Position numbers and translations under genes: made by a program
Origin: Macrostomum lignano
Lineage: Eukaryota
Direction: 5' to 3'
Assembly (NCBI GenBank): GCA_002269645.1
Contig: NIVC01001512.1
Span: 124,001 to 188,000, forward strand
Length of the DNA stretch: 64,000 nt
Notes under the pieces: model-generated
Told to the model about the DNA's origin: nothing
Databases searched by the model: none
What the model saw: only the letters and a program-made list of their open reading frames with translations
In this document: positions 14,560 through 36,830 of the stretch, in pieces
How the letters are laid out: each line of letters starts with the position of its first letter
Position numbering within the stretch: position 1 is the stretch's first letter

Positions 14560-15049
14560 AATCTTTTGTAAACTCCACGGCTAAGCAATGAAGACGCATT
14601 TGAGAAGTGACTTGTATAGTTCTTCCAACATTATTCATTCCATGCCTTGGTTATATACGAGTATATGCACAAGTAATTGTTTTGCGCCCACGAGGCCGGA
14701 AGCGGATGCCATATATCACCCGAGTGACTGAGAGTACAAGATTTGCTAGCCAAAATAAGCTTTGCTGGAAAATTCAGCAGGAAAGACAACAAAAATGATT
14801 CCTGATGCCATTGTATACAACTAATAGTACCCATAAAACGTTTCGTCTCCTTTATCCCCACTTGGCCCCCATTTGGAGCATGCAGGCTTACGCCTCGGCC
14901 GAGAAACACTACGTTCTCAGTCATTTTGACGGCACAGATAAATGAATAAACAAAAGATATTTATACTTATCAAACTGTTGCTCGCTAAATTTCGTAAGCA
15001 AAATTCTCACTAGCAAATTCCAATTTGGTAAGTTTTATTAAGTGCTAGG

Positions 15050-15374
15050 CAGTGGCGTAGCCAGGGGGGGGGTTGGGCGCGGCGGGTACCAAAAAACACG
15101 AGGCAATTGAGTGCCTGTGGCGCTAAAATGAGTGCCTGCGGAGCTAAAATGAGTGCCTGCGGCGCTAAAATGAGTGCCTGCGGCGCCAAAATGAGTGCCT
15201 GCGGCGCCAAAATGAGTGCCTGCGGCGCCAAAATGAGTGCCTGCGGCGCCAAAATGAGTGCCTGCGGCGCCAAAATGAGTGCCTGCGGCGCCAAAAGTGG
15301 CAATGGCATAAGGCATGGCCAGCCAGGCCAACACGCCCCCCCCCTCCCAATTGAAATTCCTGGCTACGCCACTG
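15050..15374. mobile_element. hAT MITE with an internal 21-bp tandem repeat (AAAATGAGTGCCTGCGGCGCC x ~9)
   Basis: Perfect 16-bp TIR CAGTGGCGTAGCCAGG / CCTGGCTACGCCACTG; 8-bp TSD GTGCTAGG / GTGCTCGG (7/8). Confidence 0.9.
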
Positions 15375-16422
15375 GTGCTCGGCTAGCAGATTACAGCTTG
15401 TAAATTTCTCGCTGGCAAATTCAAGCAATTTCCACTCCGACTATAGAACCGCGGCTCTCCTTTTCTATTTTTATCAACAGACAAAAAACTTCAATTCAAA
15501 GCACAAACAGACTGACCATCATGTTTGGTGCTGGCATGCCCCATGCACGCAGAGAGGAAGAGAGTACATTAATTTATCGATTAGACCCCAGCAACAGCAA
15601 ATGTGGAAAGCTGGGCCGGCAACTCAACCCCTCTGTCTGCAATCTATGCAAGGAGAAGCCAAAGTGAAGTGGAGGCGGGCGGTGACTGAGAGCATGACTG
15701 CACTTGCCAGAAATTAAGCTTATCGTATAACTGTTAGCTACCTTCCCCCCACACAATACGTGCAAACTCTCCATCCCTCTCTCTCTCTCTCTGTCTCGCC
15801 TCCCGCAGCCTTTTCAAGATCTCTCAAGACAATTAAGCAGTGTTAAAAAAACAATATGGCACTAAATTGTTTTTTAATCGATATTCTGAAGCAAGGCTCT
15901 TGTCCGTGCTTATAATTTGTGGTATTTGAGCACAATGAGGCAAATCAACATTGACAAGGACTTAAAGGCGTTATAAATGCAGTACTGTTCGAATTCATTT
16001 CGAACCGATTTTTTAAAACTACGAATCAAATTCAAGACATCTAATAACTTGGTAGTTGGCAGGCATACGATAGGTACGATCTTATTTTCGAGTTTATTGA
16101 CGACAAGTCAGCGTTGAGGGCTTCTTTTCCTATATTTACATGTACAGTAAATATGTATATATGAACATTAGAATTCATTTTGTTTTAATTCTCTTTTTGG
16201 CCAAATATACCACCTGCCACCGACTTAATCGCTGTTTAATTTAATTTGAGCAGGTAGCTGGAAGAATCGACAAGTACATGTAGTTAGTAGAAGTCAAAAT
16301 CAAGGATGCCGAAAGTGTTCATGATACCCAAAAAAAGTATATAAGGATTTTAAATACTCGCAACGCTGAGGTAAGGGCGCATGTCCACTCCATAACACAG
16401 GAGAGATTGGAGCAGGTGTCGG

Positions 16423-18674
16423 TGCTGGACCACCGGCGAGGTCCCCGCCGCATGGCGACGTGCTGAGATCATTGCTATTCTCAAAAAAGAGAAAGATGCG
16501 AGCGCTACCAGCTCCTACAGACCCATCTCTCTGCTCAGCTGCGTAGGAAAACTGATGGAGCGTATAGTCACGAACCGGTTGTATTTCTGGCTTGAGACCC
16601 GCAGCCTGCTAAACCGCAATCAGGCAGGTTTCCGTAAATGACACTCTACCATGGACCAACTGACGCGCATCACCCAAGCGATTTTCGATGCTTTCGAGCA
16701 GAAGAAACCGGAGCGCGCCATCCTTATCCTGCTGGACTTCGCCAAAGCCTACGACCGGGTGTGGCGCCCGGCCTTATACGCGAAAATGGCACGGCTTGGC
16801 GTCCCTAAGCATGTTATTCACTTCATCAAAAACCTCCTCTGCGACCTTCGCGCCCGTGTGCGCTGGGGGGACGCGACCTCCAACTGGAGAGTCTTCTCCA
16901 ACGGTCTGCCTCAGGGGTCGGTCATCGCACCTTTGCTATGGCTTGTTTACGTCCATGAAATGACGACGGCATCGACGGGAGCGTCCACCGTTCACTTTTC
17001 GCCGATGACACGGCACTTCTGGCGACGGGCCGGTCAATGAACGCCTGCGCTGCGAAGATCCAACCCGCGCTGGACCGTGTCGTTACGTGGACTAACAAAT
17101 GGAAGGTGACGCTGAGCCACTCTAAATGCGTCTTCACCACCTTCACGCTGAACCCCAGTGAATGCGGCGGAAAGGTCCTTCCGACACTGCGCATTGAGGG
17201 TCAGGAGCTAACATACGATCCGTCACCTACGTTCCTCGGTCTAAGCCTTGACGATCAATTGACTTTTGCTAACCATGTCGAGGCCGTGCGCCAAAAGATG
17301 GCCAATAGGCGGCGCTGCCTGCAAACTCTCGCTGGCAAGGTCTATGGCGCTCATCGGACCACGCCACAAACAGCTGCTCAGCAACGAATTTATCCGCATC
17401 ATGAGCCTGCCCGACGATGACCCAGCGCGCGAGTTGCTGTCGATCGCGCCACCGCCGCGCCTCCGCAGCAGGGCCCATGAAGCCTGGAAGCGCGACGTCG
17501 GCCCTGACCAACCTGTCGATATTCTGAGATGGGACGAAGACATTACCCTGAGCAACAAACCTTGTTTCCGCCGCGTTGGACAGTGGCTGTGCAAACTCGC
17601 TGGTTTCCACCTGGAGGACCTCATGCGCCCTGTCGAGCCCGCGCTCCCGCCATGGCACTGGCTGGATAAGCAGGTGACCATCGCGGTCGACCTGGTCGCC
17701 GCCACGCGCTGGAGTGACCCTCCCGACTTCCGCCGGGAGATTGCTGAGAGGACGCTGGACCTCCTTCATCCGGCGGACGTGCTTATCTGGACCGATGGAT
17801 CCAACCGGCCGGATGGCACCGCGTCTTGAGGAGGAGCTGTTATCACCTCGGACCCTCTGGGTATCCGGAAAGATGTCTGTGTGCCGGCCGGCCGCTGGAA
17901 CAGTAGCACCAGTGCGGAACTCGTTGCGATCGAAGCGGCCCTTGCCCGCCTGGCTGAGCTCCTCCGTAGTGGCGGCAGCCCGGCCATTACTGCCAGGCTG
18001 TGCACGGATTCCCGTGCCGGCCTCCAAACGATTCTGCGCGGCCTGACCGTCGCGGCGGACGATGTCACCCGACGCGTCTGGGCTAATATCGCTGCCCTGC
18101 CGAGTGGCTGCAAAATTCACCTGCAATGGGTGCCGGGTCACACTAACCTCCCTGGGAACGAAGCGGCTGATGAGATGGCCGGGAGAGCTACCGAGGCTCA
18201 GCAACAGCCGAATTCCGTCACCCCTATCGCCGCTAGGACTGCCATCAATCATGTTCTCCGAGTTTGGCGAAAAACGCGAGACCACATGCACCCGTATCCG
18301 AGCCCGACGCTTGGCCACGACGATCTCCCGAGATGGGGCCAGGTCACCCTTTGCCAGCTGAGAACGCGCAAATCCCCGCTCACGCGCGACACACTCCACC
18401 GATTCGGCCTCACCACTGACGACCGATGCATTACCTGTGGAGAGTCGGACTCGGTCGAGCATCTGCTCCTAACCTGCCCAGGCTACCACCAGGCTCGCAT
18501 CCGCACCTGGGGTGGCATCAGCGTTGATTGGAATACCGTGCTGGGGGGCGAGGGCAGCCTCCTCTGTGATTACCTGCGCAGGGTGGGCCGCCAAGAACCG
18601 CCTATCGACGATCCAGGTGGCAGAGCGGCCCCGACCCGGCCTCCCGCGGGCGGCCGCAGGTCGGAGGGAAGAGA
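16423..18674 (+). mobile_element. 5'-truncated non-LTR retrotransposon (I-superfamily-like: RT + RNase H + CCHC), with frameshifts and a stop
   Basis: YRPISLLS, LDFAKAYDRV, GLPQGSVIAP, LFADDT (shifted frame), RNase H IWTDGS / AELVAI / TDS / WVPGH..GNEAAD, C-terminal CITC...EHLLLTC; 13-bp TSD GAGCAGGTGTCGG at 16410-16422 and 18675-18687. Confidence 0.95.
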
Positions 18675-18677
18675 GAG

Positions 18678-18977
18678 CAGGTGTCGGGAATATTTTCTAC
18701 CTTGAAAAGCCAGTTAGGGACTCTATCAGATAGCTGTGTGTCTGATAGAAGAGTATGAGTAAAAGAGAGAAGCGAAGAACGGCAGGAGAGGATAGGAAAG
18801 GAAAGGAAAGGAGAGGGGAGGAGAGGAGTGGAAAAGAGAGGAGAGGAGATCCGCTGAGAAGAGACACAAACCCTGAGCGGCCCGGATTGCCATTTCGAAG
18901 TGTCAAAGGACCTGAGGGCCGGATAGAGAGGCTTCGAGGACCGCATCTGACCCGCGAAGCGGAGTTTGACGACCCTG
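18678..18977 (+). mobile_element. hAT (Charlie-like) MITE whose left end is the LINE target site
   Basis: CAGGTGTCGGGAA left end, GA-rich interior, AGACACAAACCCTGAGCGG..GGCCGGATAGAGAGGCTT family core, right end GTTTGACGACCCTG. Confidence 0.7.
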
Positions 18978-19598
18978 GAAAAATGCAAGCAGTCAAAAAC
19001 CTTCACTGGATCTTATAACAAAAATAAAAAAATAAATGGCCAGCATCAGCAAACTATTTTTAGGGCACATATTTTTACGTTCTGTTTAGCTTATTGTTTA
19101 CTAGACAAGTAGACACTTTCCAGTATATCCTCCCTATGGATATGGAACTAGAATCTTACGCCGCTATTGCTTGTTCGCTTCGAAAGAATAAGCTAATCGA
19201 GCGGGCATTTGAAGAGACGCTTAATCAATATTAGTTATAGTATCTAGATCCTGATGGATCGTCATTTTTGTAATAGAAAAAAACAATTTAGCCTTTAATT
19301 GTACTTTTTAGTACTAGGTAACAATATTTATAGTGCACTACCTTCAATGTACAATGCGATTTATTTTTAGCAACACGCTTAGACTTTACTACGAGCCGTA
19401 TTCTGAACTAAAACTAGTGGTTGTGGTCGCCTTCTATCTCTTATCCAATAACAAGCTTATTCAACTTTTATTGGATAGTGTTCTCATTCTCACTCTAAAC
19501 AGTATATAAAGCCATACCTAAATATCGTACACTTGGCATAGAACGCTAAACGTTTTACAAAGAAAGAAGATTTACAATTGAGTAAGATTAAACTTAAA

Positions 19599-22500
19599 AT
19601 GGCCGAGGGCGGTGGAGAAGAGGATTATTTCCCTGGAAGAGTTAGCACCTCACAGCAGGCCTCGCCGGCACAGTCCATAACCTCTCTGTCCCGTTCAGTG
19701 CAAGATATTGTTACCTACAGCCTCGAGACGGGCGAATCCGCAATACCAGAGCCCATTGCTCAAAGCTCTGCACCGGGCATCGAGCACCAGATGGAGGAGA
19801 CTGACCATTCGTTAGCTCGGAGCTCTGCACCGGGCATCGAGCACCAAATGGAGGAGACTGACCATTCGTTAGCTCGGAGCTCTGCACCGGGCATCGAGCA
19901 CCAAATGGAGGAGACTGACCATTCGTTAGCTCGGAGCTCTGCACCGGGCATCGAGCACCAAATGGAGGAGACTGACCATTCGTTAGCTCGGAGCTCTGCA
20001 CCGGGCATCGAGCACCAAATGGAGGAGACTGACCATTCGTTAGCTCGGAGCTCTGCACCGAGCATCGAGCACCAAATGGAGGAGACTGACCATTCGTTAG
20101 CTCGGAGCTCTGCACCGAGCATTGAGCACCAAATGGAGGAGACTGACCATTCGTTAGCTCGGAGCTCTGCACCGAGCATCGAGCACCAAATGGAGGAGAC
20201 TGACCATTCTTTAGCTCGGAGCTCTGCACCGGGCATCGAGCACCAAATGGAGGAGACTGACCATTCGTTAGCTCGGAGCTCTGCACCGGGCATCGAGCAC
20301 CAAATGGAGGAGACTGACCATTCGTTAGCTCGGAGTTCTGCACCGGGCATCGAGCACCAAATGGAGGAGACTGACCATTCGTTAGCTCGGAGCTCTGCAC
20401 CGGGCATCGAGCACCAAATGGAGGAGACTGACCATTCGTTAGCTCGGAGCTCTGCACCGAGCATCGAGCACCAAATGGAGGAGACTGACCATTCGTTAGC
20501 TCGGAGCTCTGCACCGGGCATCGAGCACCAAATGGAGGAGACTGACCATTCGTTAGCTCGGAGCTCTGCACCGAGCATCGAGCACCAAATGGAGGAGACT
20601 GACCATTCTTTAGCTCGGAGCTCTGCACCGGGCATCGAGCACCAAATGGAGGAGACTGACCATTCGTTAGCTCGGAGCTCTGCACCGGGCATCGAGCACC
20701 AAATGGAGGAGACTGACCATTCGTTAGCTCGGAGTTCTGCACCGGGCATCGAGCACCAAATGGAGGAGACTGACCATTCGTTAGCTCGGAGCTCTGCACC
20801 GGGCATCGAGCACCAAATGGAGGAGACTGACCATTCGTTAGCTCGGAGCTCTGCACCGAGCATCGAGCACCAAATGGAGGAGACTGACCATTCGTTAGCT
20901 CGGAGCTCTGCACCGGGCATCGAGCACCAAATGGAGGAGACTGACCATTCGTTAGCTCGGAGCTCTGCACCGGGCATCGAGCACCAAATGGAGGAGACTG
21001 ACCATTCGTTAGCTCGGAGCTCTGCACCGGGCATCGAGCACCAGATGGAGGAGACTGACCATTCGTTAGCTCGGAGCTCTGCACCGGGCATCGAGCACCA
21101 AATGGAGGAGACTGACCATTCGTTAGCTCGGAGTTCTGCACCGGGCATCGAGCACCAAATGGAGGAGACTGACCATTCGTTAGCTCGGAGCTCTGCACCG
21201 GGCATCGAGCACCAAATGGAGGAGACTGACCATTCTTTAGCTCGGAGCTCTGCACCGGGCATCGAGCACCAAATGAAGGAGACTGACCATTCGTTAGCTC
21301 GGAGCTCTGCACCGGGCATCGAGCACCAAATGGAGGAGACTGACCATTCTTTAGCTCGGAGCTCTGCACCGGGCATCGAGCACCAAATGGAGGAGACTGA
21401 CCATTCGTTAGCTCGGAGTTCTGCACCGGGCATCGAGCACCAAATGGAGGAGACTGACCATTCGTTAGCTCGGAGCTCTGCACCGGGCATCGAGCACCAA
21501 ATGGAGGAGACTGACCATTCTTTAGCTCGGAGCTCTGCACCGGGCATCGAGCACCAAATGGAGGAGACTGACCATTCGTTAGCTCGGAGTTCTGCACCTG
21601 GCATCGAGCACCAAATGGAGGAGACTGACCATTCGTTAGCTCGGAGCTCTGCACCGGGCATCGAGCACCAAATGGAGGAGACTGACCATTCGTTAGCTCG
21701 GAGCTCTGCACCGGGCATCGAGCACCAAATGGAGGAGACTGACCATTCGTTAGCTCGGAGCTCTGCACCGGGCATCGAGCACCAAATGGAGGAGACTGAC
21801 CATTCGTTAGCTCGGAGCTCTGCACCGGGCATCGAGCACCAAATGGAGGAGACTGACCATTCGTTAGCTCGGAGTTCTGCACCGGGCATCGAGCACCAAA
21901 TGGAGGAGACTGACCATTCGTTAGCTCGGAGCTCTGCACCGGGCATCGAGCACCAAATGGAGGAGACTGACCATTCTTTAGCTCGGAGCTCTGCACCGGG
22001 CATCGAGCACCAAATGGAGGAGACTGACCATTCTTTAGCTCGGAGTTCTGCACCGGGCATCGAGCACCAAATGGAGGAGACTGACCATTCTTTAGCTCGG
22101 AGCTCTGCACCGGGCATCGAGCACCAAATGGAGGAGACTGACCATTCGTTAGCTCGGAGTTCTGCACCGGGCATCGAGCACCAGATGGAGGAGGCTGACC
22201 ATTTGTCAGCTCGGAGTTCTGCACCGAGCATCGAACTTGAGGTGGAAGAGCAGCCAGAACATTTGGCAACTCAGAGTTCTGAAGCCAGCATGGAACTTAA
22301 TCAAGAAGCGGCTTCAGTTTCGCAAGATCCGACCACTACAGTTTCAAGAACGGAGTGCCAGGCAGAGGAGGCTGCGCCTGAGTTGGTCGATGTACCAAAC
22401 CAGAGTGGAGATGTTTCAGCAATCGAAGACGATTGCTCGCGCCCAGAGATCAGTTGCATCATACTTACGAACGAAATGCCAAGCAGCTCATTAACGTCTG

Positions 22501-23775
22501 TAGATTCTGGCCATCCAGTTGTCCAACCCAATCACTCTTTCGGAGAATCCAGCGTGCCGAATGAGGAACAACTGAAAATAACTGAAAAAGATGAACAGCC
22601 GCCTGCTTCACGGAAGGGTGCTGACGAAACTTCCCGCAACATCCCCGAAGTAGCTGGGATTAAGCTGAGATTGGAGCAGTTGCAAAAACCGATCCATTCC
22701 AACCAACACTCAGAGTTGGTTGTCGCTCGGGTTGAACGCTTTGAACAGCGTTCGTTGCCGCACCCAGAGAAGAAGCAGCAGCTGAGTTCAAGTCTAACGC
22801 AGATTGCAACACGGTAAAAAATTGCTGTTAATTTTTTAGGGGTTCTCTCGAATCGAATAATTTCACTTTAGCTATCAAAATAATTTATCATATAACTTGT
22901 CTTGTATTGTAGACAAGACGGAATGGAACAAACTGACCAGAATACAGCGACAAAAAGCGCTCAGAGCAGCTCCGTATCGTCGACTAGCACCGCCACTGCA
23001 TCATCTGCTTCGGCCGAGGCTTTGCAATTGCCCGACTGTCCTGATACGCACGACCTGGTACCAGACGCGTTGTTTGACGAGCCAAGTGACCAACAGCTGA
23101 ACCGCGTGACACCAACCTGGTGAGTCTGAGATAGGGTAATTGTTTCACAAGCACTAACCATGTATTACATGCTCGTAAATTTACAAGTCTATTCCGGAAT
23201 GGGGTTGAAAACCATAAATTTCATAAAGCCCCAGTCATTCTAACTTAATTTCACAAAACGAAAAGCATTCTATTTGCTATAGCAGCGTTCTATTAGTTTG
23301 ATCATGCTAGTCGACTCTCTGGAAGCCTTAAGGTTTATGAAAATGCATGGATGCTAGTCGGTTAGGCCTAGACGTTGCGAAAATGAAGCTTTGTGACGAA
23401 AGCACCTGTTTGACCACCTGAACTGATAAAGACTCTCAAACTGTTTGTAGCGCTGGCGGTGGCTCCGGCCTACCGCTAGCTCAGGAAGACTCGCCTGACG
23501 GCTTGGCCAACGTCATAGATGAGCCAGCGGAAGACGAAGCCCAGCGGCAGTCGTTGCTGCGCGGTTACGACAGTCTGCCTTCGGTCATGAACGCAGAAGC
23601 AGTCAACTGGCAGCTCAGCAGACGCGGTCATCAAAGGCAGTTTCAACTACAGCATGACGATCAATATGAAGAGCATCAACGGCCAAGACCAATAGCGACT
23701 CGAATCTGGCTTTGGCTGCGGCCTCTGTGCAACTCATGCAGCTGCCTTGGGCAACGAATCAACGTGGAAGATTAG
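19599..23775 (+). CDS. Orphan 3-exon gene C1, ~1248 aa disordered acidic protein with a 19-aa tandem repeat; join(19599..22813,22913..23119,23451..23775)
   Basis: TTAAAATGG start; two GT-AG phase-2 introns that restore a single frame (total 3747 nt); N-terminus and C-terminal LRPLCNSCSC homologous to gene C2. Confidence 0.8.
19763..22230 (+). repeat. Coding 57-bp tandem repeat, ~43 copies (SSAPGIEHQMEETDHSLAR)
   Basis: Near-identical units, no indels, frame maintained throughout. Confidence 0.95.
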
Positions 23776-26179
23776 TAGTCGTTTCAAAGATATCTCATAA
23801 AGTCTAAACAGCATTTGCTCTTCATTGTCTGTTAAATATTGCATTGTAGACAGTCTTTTCCTAGGGAGGATCCACGGCTTAGGGGTCTTGCGCCCTACCG
23901 TAATTTTGACTCACCTGATTTGCGCCCCCAGAGACAGCTGTCTTAAGGAGAGCTACCTCCTAAGCCCAGTGTCGCGCTCCCTTTGTTGTACCCTCAATGC
24001 GGCACCCCTACGTTCCCCTAGTGTGTTGCTTCCACGGTGTGGCAGCCCTATACTCGTAGTGTGTCCTCAGTGCTCTCAGTGCAACACCTTGTATTGTGTT
24101 TTCATGAAAATGCACCCTTCTATTGTAGCGGGTCTGAAAAATAAATGAGGCTTGAAAGCGGTGGTTCAATTATTTATTATCGATAATCGAGATTACCGGA
24201 AAAACACTTGCTTATTAGCTGGGTTTTCCTGGTGTATATTTATAGCAAAATTAACGGTGTTCTGGAAATTTCTTTAGAATTATAACAAAGATACAACATT
24301 ATAATGTAAACTGTAGCTAATACGGATAAATGCGTTGAATAAGAATATGGCTAATAATTAAACTATAAGATATGTAAAGGTTCCGCGTAGAAATATTTTG
24401 TATGGAAATTCGAAGAAAAATGCAGAAATTTCTTTTACTTAATTTGGAAATTTTACTCGTATAGAATGCGCGAAGGGGAAAGGAAACTTCTAGAAACTAG
24501 GTACATTGGAATAACATTGCAACACTATCTCTATATAACTTTACAATGCAATTATACCTTGTGCCAATGCACAGAACGCGCTTTCCATCCTATATGCGTT
24601 TTGCTCCATCAATTCGCCTATAGCTACAATAACCACCAAATGGCATGTAAGACCTATGCTAAAATATAGGCTATAGCTACTAGTATGAGATTAGAAGTAT
24701 GTATACTTCCCCGTCACTTTCCCGTCTTTCCCCTTCATTTACTTCTCTAACTTTATAATAGTCTAAAAGACTCAGACGACAAACATGGTCAATCCAACAC
24801 CATTGAACTCCATCAGGTATCAGACTAATATCTTAAAGCAATAGAACTCCTCCGTGATACGTAGATTGGCCTGACCTCAACAACCGGATTATTGTTGATA
24901 AGTGCAAGCCATTTTCTTGCACATAATTAAATTTGAATTTGAAATCAGGTAGCGATCTGATTCAGGTATTTAGAGTCTATAGCTTCACCTCGCAGCCTCC
25001 AATTCAAATTAGCTCTGCATAAATGAATGTGCAATCTTTTGATCTTGTGAGAGAGCCAACAGATAAACAGTGAAACTTCCAGTGGCTTCTGCCTATCGTT
25101 TGTTTTGCTGCGGCGAAAGGCGGCACAAGCAGCAAAGGCAAGAATAGCATATTAATAATGATGCACTGCGGTAGTGCGGCACCTTTGATGGCTAGACCTC
25201 AGAACAAGTAATGTAAATTATTCTGACTCAAGAACAGCCCTATGCTTGGCTTATTCAACCGTGAAATTTGTTGAAAAAATACTTGAGAATCACCATAAAT
25301 CAACTTGGCAGTGTAAGCTTGTAGCTTGCATAAAAGCCGCACACAGTTTGGAAGGCAATAATAAAATTATACGGCGGTCTCTTTGATGTGTGATAGCAGA
25401 AAAAATTTTAAAGTAAAGGAGGTAGTTATGGAGGGTGTCTGCGTCGGTGCCGTCTGCGTCGTATGACTAAAACTATAGCTATTAAAGCCTGTAAAGTGTG
25501 TTAACCCCAACCCTCCTCCGAGCCTGGGGTGGGGGGGGGGTGGGGCGGCGGCGACGCCCCCCTTGTCGGGAAGATTTTTTTATTGGTGCGGGGAGGCGGC
25601 GACGAAAATTCCTACGCCTGCCCACCCTTGCCAGTGCAAGGATTACTCTATAACTAGAATCTGGTTGAGAAACCTCCTTACCAACAAAGGCCTAATATAT
25701 GCGATTTTTTTATTTTTCTATTCCCTAGTTCCAGTTATAAAGAAATCCTTAGTCATGCAGTTGCCATCTTTCTCTCCCCAACTCTGCCTCTTCTGCACGG
25801 TTGAATAACATAACTAAAGGTTGACATTATTAGTGAAAACCAAAGCTGCTTTTGCTCGCTGCTATCCCGCCGCCTTTGCCTTCTGCTATAGTGCGGATTA
25901 ACAAACTGTTTAATACATAATGCCCAAAAGCGCATTTTATGCAAATTAAATATATCGTGTCTAGATGCTTAAGAAATGATTTCCTAAAGAATAAGTAGGC
26001 ATGAGCCATGTCAAGCCTTGAGCTTCTGGTCATAAATTTTGGTTGACAATTGAATTAACTAAGCTACGAGCTATAAGCGTAGATAGCAGCGATGAAAAAC
26101 TGGGCGCGTTCTGAATTATAGTTGCATTCTGGCTTGCGTCCCGTATTTGATGAATTTTACTAAGAATTTTCATTATGTC

Positions 26180-26909
26180 TAGGGATGTCGATTCCCCGGG
26201 TAATTTACTATCATCCCCCGGGGACCTCGGGGAAACGGCGGATAACTTAGATCTTAAGTGGTATTTTTTTACTTTGATTTAAGCTTTGGACTACATGTTC
26301 AAGGCGCAAGGGTAAAAGCTTTAAACAATGGAATGTTTATTTAAAACTGTATTTGACAACGTGGCATTGCCAAATCCTGCGCACACCTTTGTCAGAAAGA
26401 GTCCAGACTCAGGAGGCGGAAAATGCATGCTCAGCAGCTACGCTTGTGGGAGGATAATTAATGAATGAGACTGTTTTTATAATCGGAATTTTTATTTCTT
26501 GCAGATAAATCACCATTTTGTCCTTGTCTAATAGAGAGTATGCGTGCGACAGTGACTGACGCAGGACGCAGCGCTGTGCCTGCGTCAAATGCGTCAAGCC
26601 GTCAACGCAGACCAACACAGTAGTCAGTGAGGCTTCTTTTTTCCTGACGGGTTTCTACGTGCAATTTGCTTGATTGAAAGACTCGTAGTGAAAAAATATT
26701 CAAGCGTATGTTGTGTTTGAAATAATACATTGAAACAGCAGTTATGCGGCAAAAAAGCATAGACAGAGTTTCAATCAGCTTTACTGTGAATCATTTTCTT
26801 ATTTAAATGGCAAAAATTAAGTTAAAAATGCTTTTTTTTCTCCTCGGGGTCCCCGGTCTAATTCCCCGGGGAGTATTCCCCGACAAGCTCCCCGGGGTCG
26901 ACATCCTTA
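26180..26909. mobile_element. hAT MITE
   Basis: TIR TAGGGATGTCGA / TCGACATCCTTA; perfect 8-bp TSD ATTATGTC (26172-26179, 26910-26917); subterminal CCCCGGGG motifs. Confidence 0.9.
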
Positions 26910-27066
26910 ATTATGTCTTTATCTTCTAGAGCGATTAGATTAGGTAAAATACTTTATCCTTTGCAGTAAGGCTTTTAAAATTCAAAACTTTTTCCAAGAT
27001 TTCCGATTTAAACTTATCACGAGAAGCACTCACTCACTATAAACGTTTCAAATATACTTAAAACAA

Positions 27067-28020
27067 GCAGTGAACTTTCTACCACCCCACCACATGGTAC
27101 TTTGGACAGGTCCTTTTATCGTAAGGGAGGGCCGATAGAAACTCCAGCGTATGCCTGCGGGCCAGAGGAGAGGAGAGGAAAGCAGAAGAGATGAGAGAGA
27201 GAGGAGAGCTTAGAAGAGATAAACCTTGAGCGGGCCGGATTGTGAAGTTTGACAGGACCACAGGGCGGGATAGAGAGGCTTCGCGGGACGCATGGGAGGG
27301 CTGATTAAGCGCGCCAGGAATAAGCGCGCACGTGTATTTTTTTGCACACGTCGGAATAAGCGCGCAGGGAACAAGCGCGCACAGAAAAATGTTGGAATAA
27401 GCGCGCTGCGATATTCCTCGATACAGGAATGAGCGCGAAAAGTTTTGTCAAAATACTGTAATAAGCGCGCATCCATATTCCTAGGCACAGGAAAGAGCGC
27501 GCAACGTTTTTTAAAAGTCCTGGAATAAGCGCGCACAGATTTTCAACAGAACTAAGATTAAAGTCGAATTTAAACTATGTATTTAAGACGAAGCAAGGTT
27601 ACAAAGTTAAAATTGCTAAAAGCTAAAAGCTTAGCTGAAAGTTGAAACTGCAGCTGAGAAGTTCGCTAAAAATCATAAAAGTTAGTTAAAATCATCATTT
27701 GCGCGCTTAATCCCGTCAGTACAAAAGCAGCTGTGCGCTCATTCCGAAAGCGGGTAAAATTTTGGCGCGCTTGTTCCAAGTCATGGGAAAACTCGTGCGC
27801 GCTTTTTCCTGTATCGATCAAAAATGCTGCGCGCTTATTCCGGTCTGTGAAAAGTTAACTGCGCGCTTATTCAGGTTTTGGTCCGTTCTCCGGGATTACG
27901 GAATTACATGGTTATTCCGAACCATGTAAAATATGTGCGAAAATGCGCGCTTGTTCCTGGTGCGCTTAATCTAGCTACCCGGACGCATGTGGCCCGCGGA
28001 CCGGAGTTTGCCGACCACTG
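27067..28020 (+). mobile_element. hAT (Charlie-like) MITE interrupted by a nested Mutator-like element
   Basis: Family core before 27294 resumes at 27981 and ends GTTTGCCGACCACTG; left end degenerate. Confidence 0.7.
27295..27980. mobile_element. Mutator-like foldback MITE with GGAATAAGCGCGCA subterminal repeats
   Basis: 9-bp TSD GGACGCATG (27286-27294, 27981-27989); imperfect long TIRs built from the repeated motif. Confidence 0.85.
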
Positions 28021-29453
28021 TGACGTACGAAGTATAAGGGATCTAATTCGGTCTTACAGTCGTCATTGCTTTGCTAATCTGAACTGTCAGTCTCTGACAG
28101 AGTGCGCTTTAATTCTGAATTGAAAATTTTCAGGACATACCATTTGAAGCTGTAGTAAAATTGACTTTTAAAAATCAAACTTTGTCGACCTACGAACTTA
28201 TGGCTGGATATTTTCGAATTAGCTTGTAAACGTGTCTTTTTCATCAGCATGCCAACCCAACTTGTCTTCATCAACTTCAGTCTTGAGTGTCCACTAGCCC
28301 GGGCGGGCAGAACATGTAGTTACTCGTACAACTACAACCTGCTAATTGGGTGGTTCTCTTCCTCTGCACTTCCCTGTAAACCATGCACAAACTGAGTCGC
28401 ATTTAAAGACCATATAGAAATAGACCGCAAATCTTGGTGCCTACCTAGACAAGTTTTGTGACAAAAAACTTTGTAGAAAAGTCTCTCCCTCACCCACCCC
28501 ATTTCTATCGATTCGCGGTATAAAGCGGTCATCTGAACCAATTTGAGTCCTTAAGCAAGAGAAGACACTTATAACTCTGCATTGCTTCAGTTCACCCAGC
28601 TGTAAAATGGTTGCCAGCATTAGCTGCGGTAATTGAGGATGTGTGTGGCGACCCTCCAGTCCTTGGACTGAACAGCCGTACGCAGCCTTCAGATGCTGTC
28701 GGTTGCACATCTGCCCATTAGGGCAGGTGTAGTCAATTATTATTAATTATTACTATTGGACGCATTCATTTCTATGAATCTTTTATACAATTTTCTCGGC
28801 TTTATTTTCAATGTGTCGTGGCGTTTTTAAACTAAATATAATAAAAGTATGCTTGTTAATTAGAGAATAATAAAATAATAACAAAAAGTCTGACTATTCA
28901 GTCAGGAAAAGTAATAGAATGCATCCTTTAGTCGCTTTTAAAATGCAGAAGTCCACAGATTTGTGACAATATGCATGCGCACTGTGATAGCTAGCTAGAT
29001 ATATAGCAGATTCAACCACTAGAGAGAAAGGCAGACATGCATTAGACAGGCCAATAAAAGCTGCATGTCGCATTAGGGCAGAGTGGGGTGTTACACATAC
29101 TGTACACACGTACATAGAAGATAGAATTCACAGAGAGACAAAGGTGCAGAGAAAGCTCGATTTTTCAAACCCCAACAGCCAACCAACAAACAGACTTTCA
29201 GACCCGACTCCCCAGCTGGCCATTGGGTTTTGCATAGCTGCTATAAAGGGTGGAGAATTCAAAGCAACTGTTTCTCAGAGTTGAGTCACGTAAAAATCTC
29301 CAAGCCTTAAGAGCATAGGGACACATAATTACTCTTTTGATAAATGAAAAGGCCCAAAAGAATTTGTGATCCTGAAAATACACAGTATACAAAACTCCTA
29401 TATACTGTAAAAAAACTACCAAGAAAAGAAGCAGAAGCGAGTTCAACACCAGT

Positions 29454-31162
29454 ATGGCAGAAGGAAGCGACCATAGTGACGAATTTCCACTCAGAGAAGG
29501 CCAATCGCAACAAAACACGCCGTCGTCGTCTACAAACTCGCTACCGCGCTCGGCTCAGGACTTGCGTGGAATCGAGTTGGAGACCAGCGACTCATCCTTG
29601 GGCGACGGCTCGAGCCAGCAGCGACCGGCGAGTCTTCCTGAGCTGACTGAGCCGCACAGGGAGTTGCTCTTCGCATCGCAGCCGAGTCCTGACTGTGCAG
29701 CATCGGACGACGCATCTAGCGAAGACCAAGCCGAGGCATCGGAGTCGCCCACTTCGGAGAATGGCTCTGAAGTCTCTGCTGTTACCGAAAGTTCAGTAGC
29801 AAGTGTCGCCACCGACGCTTATGATCAAGAGTCGTCTAGCGAGCTAGTCCAAGACAACGTCCTAGGTAGAGTTACGGGCGCCGCTGCCACCGCGTCCGTA
29901 TGTAGGCATGAGTCGGCTCCAGCTCGCTACAATCTGTTCCAACGTAAACAAGACAGCACAGCGGCTGGAACAGGGCAGGCGGCTCCGACGCCAGTCGTAC
30001 GAAGTCCCTCACCGCCGATGGGAAGTGGCGTCCAAACCGATGCAATGGAAGGTACGACAGCCGCAATCGGCACGGATGTCAACAACGACGCTGCGGCAAC
30101 CAGTCTGCCAAAAGGGGACGACAATGACGAGGAGGCCCCGGCAAATGAAGACAACGCCGCAGCTGCGATTCCAGAGGCTCAACAGGCAGCGGCGGCTAAC
30201 GAGAATGCCGAGCTTCTTGCCGCTGCCACAGCTGTTTTTGCGAAGCCTGACCAGTCGGGTGAAAAAACAACTGGACACGAGCATGCAGCTAACTTGTGCG
30301 CGAGAAGTCCTGAAGTCACAGCTAATTTTGTGACTGGAATTGAGCTCAGAGGACAACCGCCGCTACTGCAACGTCCAGACGCCAGCTTGCGAAATGGACA
30401 CAGCGAGGGGAGCATTGACACAAGCAGAAAAACGCAAGAAAAGCAACGCAGCTGTACCCTGGGCCGGCACTCCTCGTCACCGGCTCAGAGCAGTCAGGAA
30501 GAGAAACGGCTGCAACAGCTGCACCAGCAACAACAGAAGCCAGCAGCTGAGCGAAGGTAAATCAACTGAACAGTAACTTTCTTAAATTGATCAATTAAAG
30601 CCACATGCATGAATGTAAATTTTCAAGGCGATTTCCGCACCCTTTAGAGACGGTTTGACTCTGGATGCGCAACGCCTGCCGCCGGCTCCCGAAGTTGATG
30701 AGCCAGAGGATTTGCAGCAGCAACAGCAAACTGAACAAGAACAAGCTCATACATCAGAGGCGTAAGTATAAAATGATAAAAATTCGAAACCTCAAATTTG
30801 TCAAAGCCTTAAAAGTCTATTTTTTTCTTCTATCAACGTCATGCAGTAATCAGGAAGCTCCGGAGCTGCCGCAGCTGCAGCCGGCGCCGGTTGAGACTCC
30901 ATCCATGCCGGCCACCGAATACGCAGCAGCGACGTCGGATCCGCCGCCGCCGGCCATCCCAAGGTTGGACTCAAGAAGCGACGGTATCGAGCAAGAATTC
31001 ATCAGCCCACAGGAGATTCAGCCTAGGGCTGAAGACAGACGGGACAGCATCCGCAACGCGAACAGAGGTCGGCGGCGACTGCGACACCGACTGCTCGCCT
31101 CTCTGCGCTACCTGTGCCAGTCGTGCACGTGCACCGGGAGTAGGAGGCCTGCTGCTGACTAG
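29454..31162 (+). CDS. Orphan 3-exon gene C2, ~510 aa disordered Ser/Ala/Glu-rich protein; join(29454..30556,30648..30761,30847..31162)
   Basis: Two phase-2 GT-AG introns in the same arrangement as C1 (total 1533 nt, in frame); MAEG..(D/E)F..SQQ..S..SL.RS.QD...LET N-terminus and C-terminal LRYLCQSCTC. Confidence 0.8.
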
Positions 31163-32881
31163 ACAAACTTCGAACTACAACTTCGAATATATATACTCAT
31201 CATAGCTAAAGTAGTCTTACACGCCTAATTTTAAAGAAATATATATTTTCAATACTAATGTTATTTTACCTTAGTACCCTGCAGACAAATAGATAAATGT
31301 TGGTACAGTTTATATTAGAGTCCAGATTACATGTACATAAAAAAATACAAGTACTTCAGAGATACAGAAAACAATTTCTATAGAATTCCATTTAAATAGG
31401 AAATGTAGTGTGGTTATAATTTACTATTCTAAGAGTACTCATCTGAATGTCTATTCAGCGATCATTTAAAGCAGTTTGTATCACTTCGTGTATAGATATT
31501 TATGCTTTGTCATATAAAATAAATTGTTCATTGTACAATGACATTCAAATAAAACTGAATTTTGGTTTTTTTAATTCATCCGCAGCAGCTAAGCATACAG
31601 TTAGAATCTGCTGCTGCCTAATAGAAACTTAGAGACTCAAACAGTAGAAATTAACATAATTGAGCAATTAAGTTTACAAAAAAGTCAAAATTCTCAAGTT
31701 TAGCTTATCTTTAGGCTATTTATGGAGTGTTTGTTTTGGTTTCCGGATTGGATCTGACACCTGACCCTAACCTGTTCTTGCATCTGAGTCTAAAAAGCGA
31801 TTGAAAAGTTGTTCAATTGACTGCTCACGTTGCGTCTAGAATACTGCTTTTGCTGTTGCTGTCCTCAATGTATATTGATAACAATAAAGAATCAACGCCT
31901 CCTAATCCACACAGAGCCAGCTAAGAAAGGGAATGGCAAGGAATAGTACGCTCGTAGAAGTCAGCGTTGTATCAGGACGCAACGCTCGTAAATATTGCAA
32001 AAATATTTGAAGACCCGCTTGTTTACATGTAGCTGGTATTTAGTGATGCTTGCCTTCAAAAAGCATCCTATTCAACTGTTTTAAAGAAACCTGCACTTCC
32101 ATTGAAGGCTCAGAAGCTCTAAAATAGGTCTATTTATAATTTATTAAAAGTCTTAACCTGTTAAATATACATGCATTAAAAGTATTTGTCATTATAGCTC
32201 GTAGGCAACCTGGTAACTCATTTAAAACTTGCTATGCTTTTATGCAGACATACTGCTACTAATTCAACAAAGGATGAAGAAATTTAGGTGCAATATATAT
32301 ATATTATTCCATAACTTTAGCTGTCATGACAACGTTTTTTTACTAACCCTAATACTCGTATATGCTATTATGTACTGTTTTAGAAGACGAAAAAACTACT
32401 CGTAATATTTATGTTGCTTGGCTGAATATTTCACTTAGATCTCGTATTTATCTGTAGATTTGTAGATTTGTAGATTGTTTCGAACAACCTGGCGAAAAAT
32501 TAATTATCATTTTAAGTGCCACAGATCCGGAGTTATAAGCATTTAAAGTTTGGCTGCAATACAAACAAGCGGGCCTTCAAATAATTTTGCAATATTTACG
32601 AGCGTTCGTCCTGATACAACGGTAACTTTTAGTAGACCTTGGGCAAATGGTAAGCAAGAATGGTGTGACCAACTCAGATACGTCAACTTTAGTGTGTGTG
32701 GTGTGTGGTGTGTGTGTGTACTGGGAGTGCAGGCAGATAGGGCAGGAAAACTTGAATAGACAGTTTAACTAGTGAATGAAGACGCTGTCGTCTTCAAAGG
32801 TGGGACGATGGTTTATATTGTGTCCATTATTGTTTATGGCTATGACATCTATTTATTTAACCTAAATTGAGAGCTAAAAAG

Positions 32882-35800
32882 CCCCCCACGCTCCTGGCAT
32901 TAGTTAGTCTAGTGGTATAGTGGGGGACTGGCCGCCCCCCACGCCCCTGGCATTAGTTAGTCTAGTGGTATAGTGGGGGCTGGCCGCCCCCCACGCCCCT
33001 GGCATTAGTTAGTCTAGTGGTATAGTGGGGGCTGGCCGCCCCCCACGCCCCTGGCATTTGTTAGTCTAGTGGTATAGTGGGGGCTGGCCGCCCCCACGCC
33101 CCTGGCATTTATTAGTCTAGTGGTATAGTGGGGGGCTCGCCGCCCCCACGCCCCTGGCATTAGTTAGTCTAAGTGGTATAGTGGGGGCTGGCCACCCCCC
33201 ACGCCCCTGGCATTAGTTAGTCTAGTGGTATAGTGGGTGGCTGGCCGCCCCCCACGCCCCTGGCATTAGTTAGTCTAGTGGTATAGTGGGGGGCTGGCCG
33301 CCCCCCACGCCCCTGGCATTAGTTAGTCTAGTGGTATAGTGGGGGGCTGGCCGCCCCCACGCCCCTGGCATTAGTTAGTCTAGTGGTATAGTGGGGGCTG
33401 GCCGCCCCCACGCCCCTGGCATTAGTTAGTCTAGTGGTATAGTGGTATAGTGGGGGGCTAGCCGCCCCCACGCCCCTGGCATTAGTTAGTCTAGTGGTAT
33501 AGTGTGGGGCTGGCCGCCCCCCACGCCCCTGGCATTAGTTAGTCTAGTGGTATAGTGGGGGCTGGCCGCCCCCCACGCCCCTGGCATTAGTTAGTCTAGT
33601 GGTATAGTGGGGGCTGGCCACCCCCACGCCCCTGGCATTAGTTAGTCTAGTGGTATAGTGGGGGGCTGGCCACCCCCCACGCCCCTGGCATTAGTTAGTC
33701 TAGTGGTATAGTGGGGGGCTGGCCGCCCCCCACGCCCCTGGCATTAGTTAGTCTAGTGGTATAGTGGGGGGCTGGCCGCCCCCACGCCCCTGGCATTAGT
33801 TAGTCTAGTGGTATAGTGGGGGGGCTGGCCGCCCCCCACGCCCCTGGCATTAGTTAGTCTAAGTGGTATAGTGGGGGCTGGCCGCCCCCCACGCCCCTGG
33901 CATTAGTTAGTCTAGTGGTATAGTGGGGGGCTGGCCGCCCCCCACGCCCCTGGCATTAGTTAGTCTAGTGGTATAGTGGGGGCTGGCCGCCCCCCACGCC
34001 CCTGGCATTAGTTAGTCTAAGTGGTATAGTGGGGGGCTGGCCGCCCCCACGCCCCTGGCATTAGTTAGTCTAGTGGTATAGTGGGGGCTGGCCACCCCCA
34101 CGCCCCTGGCATTAGTTAGTCTAGTGGTATAGTGGGGGCTGGCCGCCCCCCACGCCCCTGGCATTTATTAGTCTAGTGGTATAGTGGGGGGCTCGCCGCC
34201 CCCACGCCCCTGGCATTAGTTAGTCTAAGTGGTATAGTGGGGGGCTGGCCGCCCCCCACGCCCCTGGCATTAGTTAGTCTAGTGGTATAGTGGTATAGTG
34301 GGGGGCTGGCCGCCCCCCACACCCTGGCATTAGTTAGTCTAGTGGTATAGTAGGGGGCTGGCCGCCCCCACGCCCCTGGCATTAGTTAGTCTAGTGGTAT
34401 AGTGGGGGCTGGCCGCCCCCACGCCCCTGGCATTAGTTAGTCTAGTGGTATAGTGGGGGGCTGGCCGCCCCCCACGCCCCTGGCATTAGTTAGTCTAAGT
34501 GGTATAGTGGGGGGCTTACCGCCCCCCACGCCCCTGGCATTAGTTAGTCTAGTGGTATAGTGGGGGGCTGGCCACCCCCCACGCCCCTGGCATTAGTTAG
34601 TCTAGTGGTATAGTGGGGGCTGGCCGCCCCCACGCCCCTGGCATTAGTTAGTCTAGTGGTATAGTGGGGGCTGGCCGCCCCCCACGCCCCTGGCATTAGT
34701 TAGTCTAGTGGTATAGTGGGGGGCTGGCCGCCCCCCACGCCCCTGGCATTAGTTAGTCTAAGTGGTATAGTGGGGGGCTGCCGCCCCCCACGCCCCTGGC
34801 ATTAGTTAGTCTAGTGGTATAGTGGGGGGCTGGCCGCCCCCACGCCCCTGGCATTAGTTAGTCTAGTGGTATAGTGGTATAGTGGGGGGGCTAGCCGCCC
34901 CCCACGCCCCTGGCATTAGTTAGTCTAGTGGTATAGTGGGGGGCTGGCCGCCCCCACGCCCCTGGCATTAGTTAGTCTAGTGGTATAGTAGGGGGCTGGC
35001 CGCCCCCCACGCCCCTGGCATTTATTAGTCTAGTGGTATAGTGGGGGGCTAGCCGCCCCCCACGCCCCTGGCATTAGTTAGTCTAGTGGTATAGTGGGGG
35101 GCTGGCCGCCCCCACGCCCCTGGCATTAGTTAGTCTAGTGGTATAGTGGGGGCTGGCCACCCCCCACGCCCCTGGCATTAGTTAGTCTAGTGGTATAGTG
35201 GGGGGCTGGCCACCCCCCACGCCCCTGGCATTAGTTAGTCTAGTGGTATAGTGGGGGGCTGGCCGCCCCCCACGCCCCTGGCATTAGTTAGTCTAGTGGT
35301 ATAGTGGGGGCTGGCCGCCCCCACGCCCCTGGCATTAGTTAGTCTAGTGGTATAGTGGGGGGCTGGCCGCCCCCCACGCCCCTGGCATTAGTTAGTCTAG
35401 TGGTATAGTGGGGGGCTGGCCGCCCCCACGCCCCTGGCATTAGTTAGTCTAGTGGTATAGTGGGGGCTGGCCGCCCCCCACGCCCCTGGCATTAGTTAGT
35501 CTAGTGGTATAGTGGGGGGCTGGCCGCCCCCACGCCCCTGGCATTAGTTAGTCTAGTGGTATAGTGGGGGCTGGCCACCCCCACGCCCCTGGCATTAGTT
35601 AGTCTAGTGGTATAGTGGGGGCTGGCCGCCCCCACGCCCCTGGCATTTATTAGTCTAGTGGTATAGTGGGGGGCTCGCCGCCCCCACGCCCCTGGCATTA
35701 GTTAGTCTAAGTGGTATAGTGGGGGCTGGCCGCCCCCCACGCCCCTGGCATTAGTTAGTCTAGTGGTATAGTGGTATAGTGGGGGCTGGCCGCCCCCACA

Positions 35801-36525: not shown

Positions 36526-36830
36526 CCACACCCCCGCTCCCCCACCCCTCCCGCGCGTTGTTGTTGGGGAGGGTGGTTGTTGTTGTGGGGTTTGCGTAAC
36601 GTGGGGGCTGCCGCCCCCACACCCCCGCTCCCCCACCCCTCCCGCGCGTTGTTGTTGGGGAGGGTGGTTGTTGTTGTGGGGTTTGCGTAACGTGGGGGCT
36701 GCCGCCCCACACCCCCGCTCCCCACCCCTCCCGCACATTGTTGTTGGGGAGGGTGGTTGTTGTTGTGGGGTTTGCGTAACGTGGGGGCTGCCGCCCCCAC
36801 ACCCCCGCTCCCCACCCCACCCCTCCGCAA
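36526..36830. repeat. ~90-bp GC/GT-rich secondary repeat (~3.3 copies); also at ~42395-42690; absent from unit 3
   Basis: CCCCCGCTCC recurs at 36531, 36622, 36712 and 36802. Confidence 0.9.

What the first reader, a model, noticed from the sequence alone, without database searches (positions are those of the whole stretch)
19599..31162. Paralogous 3-exon orphan genes ending in a basic helix plus CxxCxC
Seen: C1 and C2 share exon architecture (long exon 1, two phase-2 introns), the N-terminal ~50 aa, a GI(K/E)LR motif late in exon 1, R(Q)DG at the exon 1/2 junction, and LRPLCNSCSCLG / LRYLCQSCTCTG. The interiors are not alignable by eye and differ 2.4-fold in length. No signal peptide or TM segment is evident. 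Established: Cys clusters next to basic/hydrophobic residues are common S-palmitoylation sites. Inference: membrane-tethered disordered scaffolds or spacers; metal binding is an alternative.
Basis: partly seen in the sequence, partly recalled or inferred. Interest (0 to 1): 0.75.

Follow-up and report, generated by a model that had tools for sequence, protein, structure and literature searches.

The report
Paralogous orphan flatworm genes, Cys-tail
Two neighbouring genes of the flatworm Macrostomum lignano are real, anciently duplicated, lineage-restricted genes for acidic disordered proteins that keep only their first ~55 residues and a C-terminal Arg/Leu-rich stretch plus a CxSCxC motif; a fatty-acid (palmitoyl) membrane anchor is a plausible guess that sequence alone cannot prove.

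Summary
The window is Macrostomum lignano contig NIVC01001512.1 (Mlig_3_7). C1 (19599-23775, 1248 aa) and C2 (29454-31162, 510 aa) each have three exons and two phase-2 GT-AG introns. C2's spliced product is identical to GenBank PAA67040.1, from an RNA-seq-derived annotation.

Paralogy is significant at the N-terminus (55 aa, z=16) and over the last 40 aa (z=8.8). It is not significant for the GI(K/E)LR block or exon 2 taken alone. Synonymous sites between C1 and C2 are saturated, so the duplication is old and the termini are conserved at protein level.

The 2.4-fold length difference comes entirely from an in-frame 57-bp minisatellite, 44 x SSAPGIEHQMEETDHSLAR, which makes up 67% of C1.

No homologue turned up in Pfam, the PDB or an exhaustive HMMER scan of 1.84 billion representatives. 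Both proteins are acidic (pI about 4.6-4.7), have no TM segment or signal peptide, and are predicted disordered. A low-confidence helix ends at the first Cys in C2 only.

S-acylation fits the sequence: Cys cluster, Arg and hydrophobic neighbours, no CaaX. It is untested. The UniRef label 'RING-type' could not be reproduced. Interest is modest: an uncharacterised orphan family with a generic, testable hypothesis.

The parts
19599..22813 (+). C1 exon 1 (ATG at 19599; first in-frame ATG after the stop at 19539-19541); ends 2 nt into a codon (phase-2 donor ACG|GTAAAA)
   Evidence: the annotated gene 19560-23775 in GCA_002269645.1 has a product length that matches
19599..19763 (+). C1 conserved N-terminal block (55 aa, MAEGGGEEDYFPGRVSTSQQ...LET...)
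   Evidence: z=16; nt identity 49%, pS 0.81 vs pN 0.42
19764..22271 (+). In-frame 57-bp minisatellite inside C1 exon 1: 44 units of SSAPGIEHQMEETDHSLAR (42 near-perfect, 2 degenerate at the 3' end); 836 of 1248 aa
22913..23119 (+). C1 exon 2 (207 nt, keeps phase 2); flanked by introns 22814-22912 (99 nt) and 23120-23450 (331 nt)
23451..23775 (+). C1 exon 3 up to the stop codon
23701..23772 (+). C1 C-terminal conserved motif RIWLWLRPLCNSCSCLGQRINVED (Cys cluster at 23728-23745)
29454..30556 (+). C2 exon 1 (phase-2 donor AAG|GTAAAT); N-terminal conserved block is 29454-29618
   Evidence: 100% identical to PAA67040.1
30648..30761 (+). C2 exon 2 (114 nt); introns 30557-30647 (91 nt) and 30762-30846 (85 nt)
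30847..31162 (+). C2 exon 3 up to the stop codon
31088..31159 (+). C2 C-terminal conserved motif RLLASLRYLCQSCTCTGSRRPAAD (Cys cluster at 31115-31132); preceded by RGRRRLRH, inside the low-confidence AF2 helix at residues 467-496
15912..24022 (.). About 8.1 kb present here but absent from the diverged (about 93% nt) copy of the locus, L002 (NIVC01001189.1). It holds a retroelement fragment and the whole of C1.

Best explanation
C1 and C2 are two real, anciently duplicated, Macrostomum-restricted protein-coding genes. Each encodes a cytosolic, strongly acidic, intrinsically disordered protein.

Selection has held only two modules:
- a 45-55-aa N-terminal block;
- a C-terminal tail made of an Arg plus Leu/Trp-rich stretch, followed by L-C-x-S-C-x-C-x-G-x-R-x4-D-COOH.

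Everything between the modules drifts freely. In C1 the interior has been inflated by a recent 44-copy in-frame minisatellite.

Most likely mechanism (inferred, not shown):
1. The Arg/hydrophobic stretch gives the soluble protein weak, transient affinity for anionic Golgi or plasma-membrane leaflets.
2. A DHHC acyltransferase then S-acylates one or more of the three cysteines.
3. The C-terminus becomes pinned to the membrane and the long polyanionic chain projects into the cytoplasm.
4. The conserved N-terminal block would then be the partner-binding end.
For: Shown:
- Gene models and splice phases.
- C2's product is identical to a transcript-derived GenBank protein.
- Significant N- and C-terminal similarity. 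Synonymous sites are saturated while pN is about 0.42-0.45, so conservation acts at protein level.
- The C2 ORF is intact in all three genomic copies. Between the window and L002 the CDS has 0 indels in 1533 nt, against 8 indel events in 878 nt of flank and intron (Fisher p=3e-4). Divergence is 3.6% in the CDS against 11.4% outside it.
- No TM segment or signal peptide; pI about 4.6-4.7.
- AF2 predicts disorder, with a helix that ends exactly at the first Cys in C2.

Consistent with S-acylation:
- Three clustered Cys embedded in hydrophobic residues (L-x-x-L-C) with Arg on both sides. This is the pattern proposed as a general requirement for S-acylation of peripheral proteins that lack prenyl or myristoyl groups, such as GAP-43 and PSD-95 (PMC6944663).
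- The CxxCxC spacing matches the acylated or prenylated cysteines of the H-Ras tail and part of the SNAP-25 cluster (from my own knowledge).
Against:
- The C1 tail is only weakly basic (net +1 over the last 50 aa) and AF2 predicts no helix there.
- dN/dS between the C2 copies is 0.65, not significantly below 1 (p=0.096), so constraint on most of the protein is weak.
- There are only two paralogues and no orthologues from other species, so conservation of each cysteine rests on a single old comparison plus near-identical copies.
- No expression or localisation data were found.
Confidence: 0.4

Rival explanations
1. The CxSCxC cluster binds metal (Zn or Cu) or forms intermolecular disulfides. 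It would act as a C-terminal dimerisation or oligomerisation knot, or as a metal sensor, and not as a lipid anchor. In C1 this would combine with the His/Met/Glu/Asp-rich repeat to make a metal-buffering protein.
For: CxxC and CxC spacings are classic thiolate ligand spacings (established knowledge). The C1 repeat carries 2 His, 1 Met and 4 Glu/Asp per 19 aa, repeated 44 times, giving 7.7% His overall. P0003 has gained a fourth Cys three residues upstream, giving LCYLCQSCTC.
Against: Only three Cys are conserved. No His or fourth Cys lies at a conserved position: the nearest His is at -10 from the first Cys in C2 and -18 in C1 (sequence). C2 has no His-rich repeat (2.0% His), so metal binding is not a family trait. 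No zinc-finger family matched at E<=1.
Confidence: 0.2
2. The Arg-rich C-terminus is a nuclear or nucleolar targeting segment, or a nucleic-acid-binding segment, and the proteins are acidic nuclear disordered proteins. The cysteines would be incidental or regulatory.
For: C2 has RGRRRLRHR directly upstream of the motif and net +8 over its last 50 aa. An acidic disordered body with a basic tail is typical of nucleolar or chromatin-associated proteins (general knowledge).
Against: C1 lacks the polybasic run (net +1). What the two paralogues share is L-x-x-L-C-x-S-C-x-C-x-G-x-R, not the Arg run.
Confidence: 0.15
3. The genes are fast-evolving, weakly constrained, lineage-specific transcribed ORFs with little or no protein function. 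The shared termini would be leftover ancestry.
For: There are no homologues anywhere. dN/dS is 0.65 and not significantly below 1. C1 is entirely missing from the diverged copy of the locus. Two thirds of C1 is a young minisatellite.
Against: With pS saturated at 0.7-0.8, unconstrained termini would not still align at z=16 and z=8.8. Intron positions and phases are retained. The 510-codon ORF carries no indel in any of three copies while the flanks do.
Confidence: 0.15
4. They are RING-type E3 ligase-like proteins, as the UniRef names of two C2 copies state.
For: UniRef100_A0A1I8HMN5 and UniRef100_A0A1I8GZN9 are named 'RING-type domain-containing protein'.
Against: No RING or other Pfam family matched at E<=1. 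C2 has only 7 Cys and no C3HC4 or C3H2C3 spacing. No uninterrupted full or half RING pattern occurs in any of the six frames of the 64-kb window, although a RING split across introns would escape that search. The nearly identical P0002 is named 'Uncharacterized protein'.
Confidence: 0.02

Closest known systems
GAP-43 / PSD-95-type S-acylated peripheral proteins (no prior prenyl or myristoyl group)
   Same: A soluble protein with a small Cys cluster set in hydrophobic residues and flanked by basic residues that provide the first electrostatic contact with the membrane (PMC6944663).
   Different: In those proteins the motif is N-terminal (MLCCMRR..., MDCLCIV...). Here it lies 10-15 residues from the C-terminus. 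There is no sequence homology, and acylation has not been shown here.
H-Ras hypervariable tail (C-M-S-C-K-C-V-L-S; from my own knowledge)
   Same: Identical C-x-x-C-x-C spacing at a C-terminus, with two palmitoyl cysteines next to a third lipidated cysteine.
   Different: In H-Ras the third Cys is the CaaX cysteine at position -4 and is farnesylated. Here the third Cys is at -10 in both paralogues, so there is no CaaX box and no prenylation signal. These are not GTPases.
SNAP-25/23 cysteine-rich linker (C-x-x-C-x-C-x-C; from my own knowledge; cited as a 'cysteine-rich domain' in the references of PMC8107437)
   Same: A CxxCxC core preceded by hydrophobic residues in a protein with no TM segment. 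Multiple S-acylation provides the only membrane anchor.
   Different: The SNAP-25 cluster is central, sits between two SNARE helices and has four Cys. There is no SNARE homology here (Pfam none).
GRK6A C-terminus (amphipathic basic helix, then a CCxxC palmitoylation cluster, then a short acidic tail; from my own knowledge)
   Same: The same order of elements as in C2: a basic/hydrophobic helix, a Cys cluster, then a tail of about 10 residues ending in an acidic residue.
   Different: A kinase with a folded body; no homology. C1 has no comparable predicted helix.

Membership tests
S-acylated peripheral membrane proteins lacking another lipid anchor | Cysteine(s) next to hydrophobic and basic residues in a protein with no TM segment or signal peptide | tested here: met
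   LRPLCNSCSCLGQR and LRYLCQSCTCTGSRR. Maximum KD19 is 0.81 and 0.94, and the N-termini are hydrophilic. This is only permissive, because no consensus exists (PMC8107437).
S-acylated peripheral membrane proteins lacking another lipid anchor | Thioester-linked fatty acid on the cysteines (hydroxylamine-sensitive) | not testable with these tools
   Needs acyl-biotin exchange, acyl-RAC or click-palmitate labelling.
S-acylated peripheral membrane proteins lacking another lipid anchor | Cysteine-dependent membrane localisation | not testable with these tools
   Needs GFP-tail fusions with and without Cys-to-Ser changes.
CaaX-prenylated proteins (Ras-type tails) | Cys exactly four residues from the C-terminus (C-a-a-X) | tested here: not met
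   The last Cys is at -10 in C1, C2, P0002 and P0003. The tails are LGQRINVED and TGSRRPAAD.
RING-type zinc finger (the UniRef name of P0001 and P0003) | Eight-ligand C3HC4 or C3H2C3 pattern, or a match to a RING profile | tested here: not met
   No Pfam hit at E<=1. C2 has 7 Cys in total with no RING spacing. No uninterrupted RING pattern occurs in any frame of the window.
Intramolecular tetrahedral Zn(Cys/His)4 site (zinc knuckle or ribbon) | Four conserved Cys or His ligands | tested here: not met
   Only three Cys are conserved. The nearest His lies at a non-equivalent position in the two paralogues (-10 and -18). An intermolecular site is not excluded.
Tail-anchored or TM membrane proteins | A hydrophobic segment of about 18 residues or more near the C-terminus | tested here: not met
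   The best 19-residue window in C1, IATRIWLWLRPLCNSCSCL, has mean KD 0.81 and contains 2 Arg. C2 has none at its C-terminus.
Taxonomically restricted ('orphan') gene family | No detectable homologue outside the lineage | tested here: met
   An exhaustive HMMER profile search of 1.84e9 representatives returned only the C2 cluster. The word-indexed search returned only M. lignano copies. Caveat: other Macrostomum genomes and transcriptomes are apparently not in these libraries.

The most novel reading that the evidence does not exclude
C1 and C2 found a Macrostomum-specific family of C-terminally lipid-anchored, hyper-acidic disordered 'brush' proteins with a conserved N-terminal docking block. 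In C1, a 44-fold expansion of a His/Met/Glu/Asp-rich 19-mer would have turned the spacer into a high-capacity, membrane-tethered divalent-metal buffer. The copy number of the 57-bp unit would be free to vary between subgenomes and individuals.
Probability: 0.08. Interest if true: 0.5.

Novelty: new member of a known kind. Interest (0 to 1): 0.3.

Why it matters
If the tail is an S-acylation signal, it would be a compact, transferable C-terminal membrane-anchoring tag of about 25 aa, native to the one flatworm with routine transgenesis. It would also show how orphan disordered proteins keep only their two functional ends while the interior turns over and expands by minisatellite growth. As things stand, the result is a clean annotation of a small uncharacterised family. 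Similar lineage-specific repeat-bearing genes are likely to be common in this repeat-rich genome, where simple and tandem repeats make up 15% of the sequence (PMC5730564).

Tried and rejected
1. Word-indexed search with repeat-collapsed C1: nothing at E<=10. This is uninformative. The exact 1261-aa sequence I rebuilt for annotated C1 is not in the collection, and low-complexity words filled the list of 8000 candidates.

2. Termini-only profile A5, N-terminal 55 aa plus C-terminal 31 aa: only 10 candidates and none scored. It did not recover even P0001, which contains both halves exactly. The search failed its own positive control and says nothing about relatives.

It was replaced by A4, which uses exact window fragments.

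4. RING hypothesis raised by the UniRef name: rejected.

5. Pfam scan by DNA reference of the stretches downstream of each gene failed on stop codons and was not repeated. The six-frame regular-expression search and the ORF scan were used instead.

6. Expression class from the literature. 'Mlig027183' and 'Mlig005752' appear in no main text. They also appear in none of the held supplements of PMC5816591 (the table was cut when stored), PMC5730564, PMC7336406 or PMC12896417. PMC10786194 has no held supplements.

7. PDB sequence searches: nothing.

8. AF2 models are too poor (pLDDT 38.5 and 52.8) to justify a fold search.

9. Further family members: none by tblastn or motif regular expression in the window, L002 or L003.

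10. Rfam and tRNA scans of the window: empty.


Full report
**Identity of the window.** The spliced C2 protein is 100% identical to GenBank PAA67040.1, 'hypothetical protein BOX15_Mlig027183g1 [Macrostomum lignano]'. The locus fetched for it, L001, comes from contig NIVC01001512.1 of assembly GCA_002269645.1 (Mlig_3_7). It is 100% identical to window 19454-41162. The window is therefore nuclear DNA of a free-living flatworm. Its genome is more than half repetitive, with simple and tandem repeats making up 15% (PMC5730564), and it holds three subgenomes (PMC10733133).

**Checking the observation.** Reading the sequence and splicing it gives these models:
- C1: 19599-22813, 22913-23119 and 23451-23775; 1248 aa.
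- C2: 29454-30556, 30648-30761 and 30847-31162; 510 aa.
- All four introns are GT-AG, short (99, 331, 91 and 85 nt) and phase 2.

The GenBank annotation has the same C2 product. It also has a C1 gene at 19560-23775 with a 1261-aa product, which equals my model plus 13 codons of 5'-partial CDS. An in-frame stop at 19539 makes 19599 the first usable ATG. That annotation was derived from RNA-seq (StringTie/TACO/TBONE, ORFs by TransDecoder; PMC5730564).

**Is the similarity more than chance?**
- BLASTP of repeat-collapsed C1 against C2 gives 22/44 identities at the N-terminus (E=7e-8), and LCxSCxCxGxR at the C-terminus (E=0.01).
- Against 1000 composition-preserving shuffles, the N-terminal 55 aa score z=16 and the last 40 aa score z=8.8. 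No shuffle reached either score.
- The GI(K/E)LR block (z=1.1), exon 2 (z=2.1) and the interiors (z=0) are not distinguishable from chance by themselves.
- The C-terminal motif lies at exactly the same distance from the stop codon in both genes: C-x-x-C-x-C followed by nine residues ending in Asp.
- At nucleotide level the conserved termini are only 49% identical. Synonymous differences are saturated (pS 0.70-0.81) while pN is 0.42-0.45.

This is an old duplication with protein-level conservation. It is not recent gene conversion.

- Two thirds of C1 is a 57-bp in-frame minisatellite at 19764-22271. It has 44 units of SSAPGIEHQMEETDHSLAR, 42 of them near-perfect.
- Three of the four recurrent variants among the units are synonymous.
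- This array alone explains the 2.4-fold length difference. It also explains the long antisense ORFs over the same stretch.

**Nature of the proteins.**
- Both are acidic (pI 4.69 and 4.62) and hydrophilic (GRAVY about -0.9). They are rich in Ser, Ala, Glu, Gln and Pro.
- Neither has a hydrophobic N-terminus, nor any 19-residue window above KD 0.94.
- AlphaFold2 on C2 gives mean pLDDT 38.5 with only a few low-confidence helices. One spans residues 467-496 and stops at the first Cys of the motif.
- C1 exon 3 folded alone gives no secondary structure. Its pre-Cys stretch, RPRPIATRIWLWLRPL, is short, bounded by prolines and rich in Arg and Trp. It is not a long basic helix.

**Homologues.**
- Pfam: none at E<=1.
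- PDB: none.
- The word-indexed search with C2 found only its own cluster of three M. lignano copies.
- An exhaustive HMMER profile search was built from C2, P0003 and the exact C1 N- and C-terminal fragments. Run against 1.84 billion representatives, it returned only that cluster.
- Two other searches were uninformative (see Tried and rejected).
- The UniRef label 'RING-type domain-containing protein' on two of the C2 copies could not be reproduced. There is no RING profile hit, C2 has only seven Cys, and no uninterrupted RING spacing occurs in any frame of the window.

**Evidence that the ORFs are under coding constraint.**
- C2 exists in three copies, consistent with three subgenomes: the window; L003 (99.6% nt); and L002 (about 93% nt, Mlig005752g1).
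- Between the window and L002 the 1533-nt CDS has no indel and 3.6% substitutions. The 878 nt of aligned flanks and introns have 8 indel events and 11.4% substitutions (Fisher p=3e-4).
- dN/dS is 0.65, not significantly below 1. This fits a mostly disordered, weakly constrained body.

**Locus history.**
- Compared with L002, the window carries an extra stretch of about 8.1 kb (about 15912-24022). It holds a non-LTR retroelement fragment (ORF 17881-18705, RNase H plus zf-RVT) and the entire C1 gene.
- C1 has introns and is saturated in dS against C2. It is therefore neither a retrocopy nor a young tandem duplicate.
- Whether the 8.1 kb was inserted here or deleted in the other subgenome cannot be decided without an outgroup.
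- L003 loses similarity upstream of window 24123, within its 10-kb flank. Whether it carries C1 is unknown.

**Mechanism.**
- Selection preserves the two ends. The C-terminal end is a Cys triplet embedded in Leu (L-x-x-L-C), with Arg before and after it. It sits in a soluble protein with no CaaX box, since the last Cys is at -10.
- This is the configuration proposed as a general requirement for S-acylation of peripheral proteins that lack a first lipid anchor. Hydrophobic and basic residues give transient binding to anionic Golgi membranes, where DHHC enzymes act (GAP-43, PSD-95; PMC6944663).
- The CxxCxC spacing recalls the H-Ras tail and the SNAP-25 cluster. The order of helix, Cys cluster and short tail recalls GRK6A. 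These three comparisons come from my own knowledge and are resemblances, not tests.
- I rate S-acyl anchoring at about 0.4. Rivals are metal or disulfide-mediated oligomerisation (0.2), a nuclear or nucleic-acid-binding basic tail (0.15), weakly functional orphan ORFs (0.15) and RING (0.02).

**Verdict.**
The repeat explains the length difference, two of the five shared features are not significant alone, and the 'basic helix' applies to C2 only.
Its core claim of palmitoyl tethering is untested.
- Both genes are already annotated as hypothetical proteins.
- The finding is an uncharacterised small orphan family with a generic, readily testable hypothesis, in an organism that has transgenesis. 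Interest is modest.

Noticed in passing
window 32881-47279: Three blocks of a 52-53-bp satellite (about 69, 65 and 45 copies; the unit has G6/C6 inverted ends: GCCCCCCAC...GTGGGGGGC). The first two blocks are each followed by a 91-bp x 3.5 repeat (36508-36822 and 42377-42687) and about 2.2 kb of spacer; no such repeat was listed after the third. Together they form a higher-order tandem duplication of about 6 kb (96% identical). The near-identical copy L003 lacks the whole 32772-49412 stretch.
   Followed up: partly
window ~15912-24022 vs L002:3800-4300: An 8.1-kb presence/absence difference between subgenome copies. It contains a retroelement fragment plus the entire C1 gene. The direction (insertion or deletion) is unresolved.
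   Followed up: partly
window 17881-18705 (+), with overlapping ORFs 17269-18462 (-) and 17266-17829 (+): The ORF matches RNase H (PF00075) and zf-RVT (PF13966). It is a non-LTR retrotransposon fragment directly upstream of C1.
   Followed up: partly
window 29454-31162 vs L002:10001-11712: Divergence between the two C2 copies is patchy: exon 1 1.8%, exon 2 7.0%, exon 3 8.5%, intron 1 5.5%, intron 2 21%, flanks 10-14%. dS in exon 1 (0.023) is far below the flank divergence. This suggests gene conversion or nucleotide-level constraint on exon 1.
   Followed up: partly
P0003 / L002:11395-11712: The Mlig005752g1 copy has an R-to-C change three residues before the motif (LCYLCQSCTC, a fourth Cys). 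It also has one extra residue just after the intron-2 junction (511 vs 510 aa), possibly from an alternative acceptor.
   Followed up: no
P0001, P0003 (database names): UniRef names these 510/511-aa proteins 'RING-type domain-containing protein', while the near-identical P0002 is 'Uncharacterized protein'. No RING feature could be found, so this is probably an automatic-annotation artefact.
   Followed up: yes
window 53211-54038 (-): The ORF matches SRAP (PF02586, E=1.5e-25), an HMCES-like gene. The same gene is called in L003 at 14939-16811.
   Followed up: no
window 61883-62368 (-): The ORF matches the NXF1-5 leucine-rich repeat domain (PF24048, E=2e-14). It is probably an exon of an mRNA export factor gene.
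   Followed up: no
window 663-1116, 1701-2336, 15108-15296, 53184-53483, 55224-56005, 59672-60625: Many further minisatellites (9-bp x 52, 16-bp x 40, 21-bp x 9, 28-bp x 11, 23-bp x 34, 39-bp x 24). Several long ORFs listed over them (for example 446-1192, 1673-2305 and 59651-60571) are likely repeat artefacts.
   Followed up: no
window 19503-19511 and 29242-29248: TATA-like boxes: TATATAAAG lies about 50 nt upstream of the annotated 5' end of C1 (19560), and TATAAAG lies 206 nt upstream of the C2 ATG. These were read from the sequence only.
   Followed up: no
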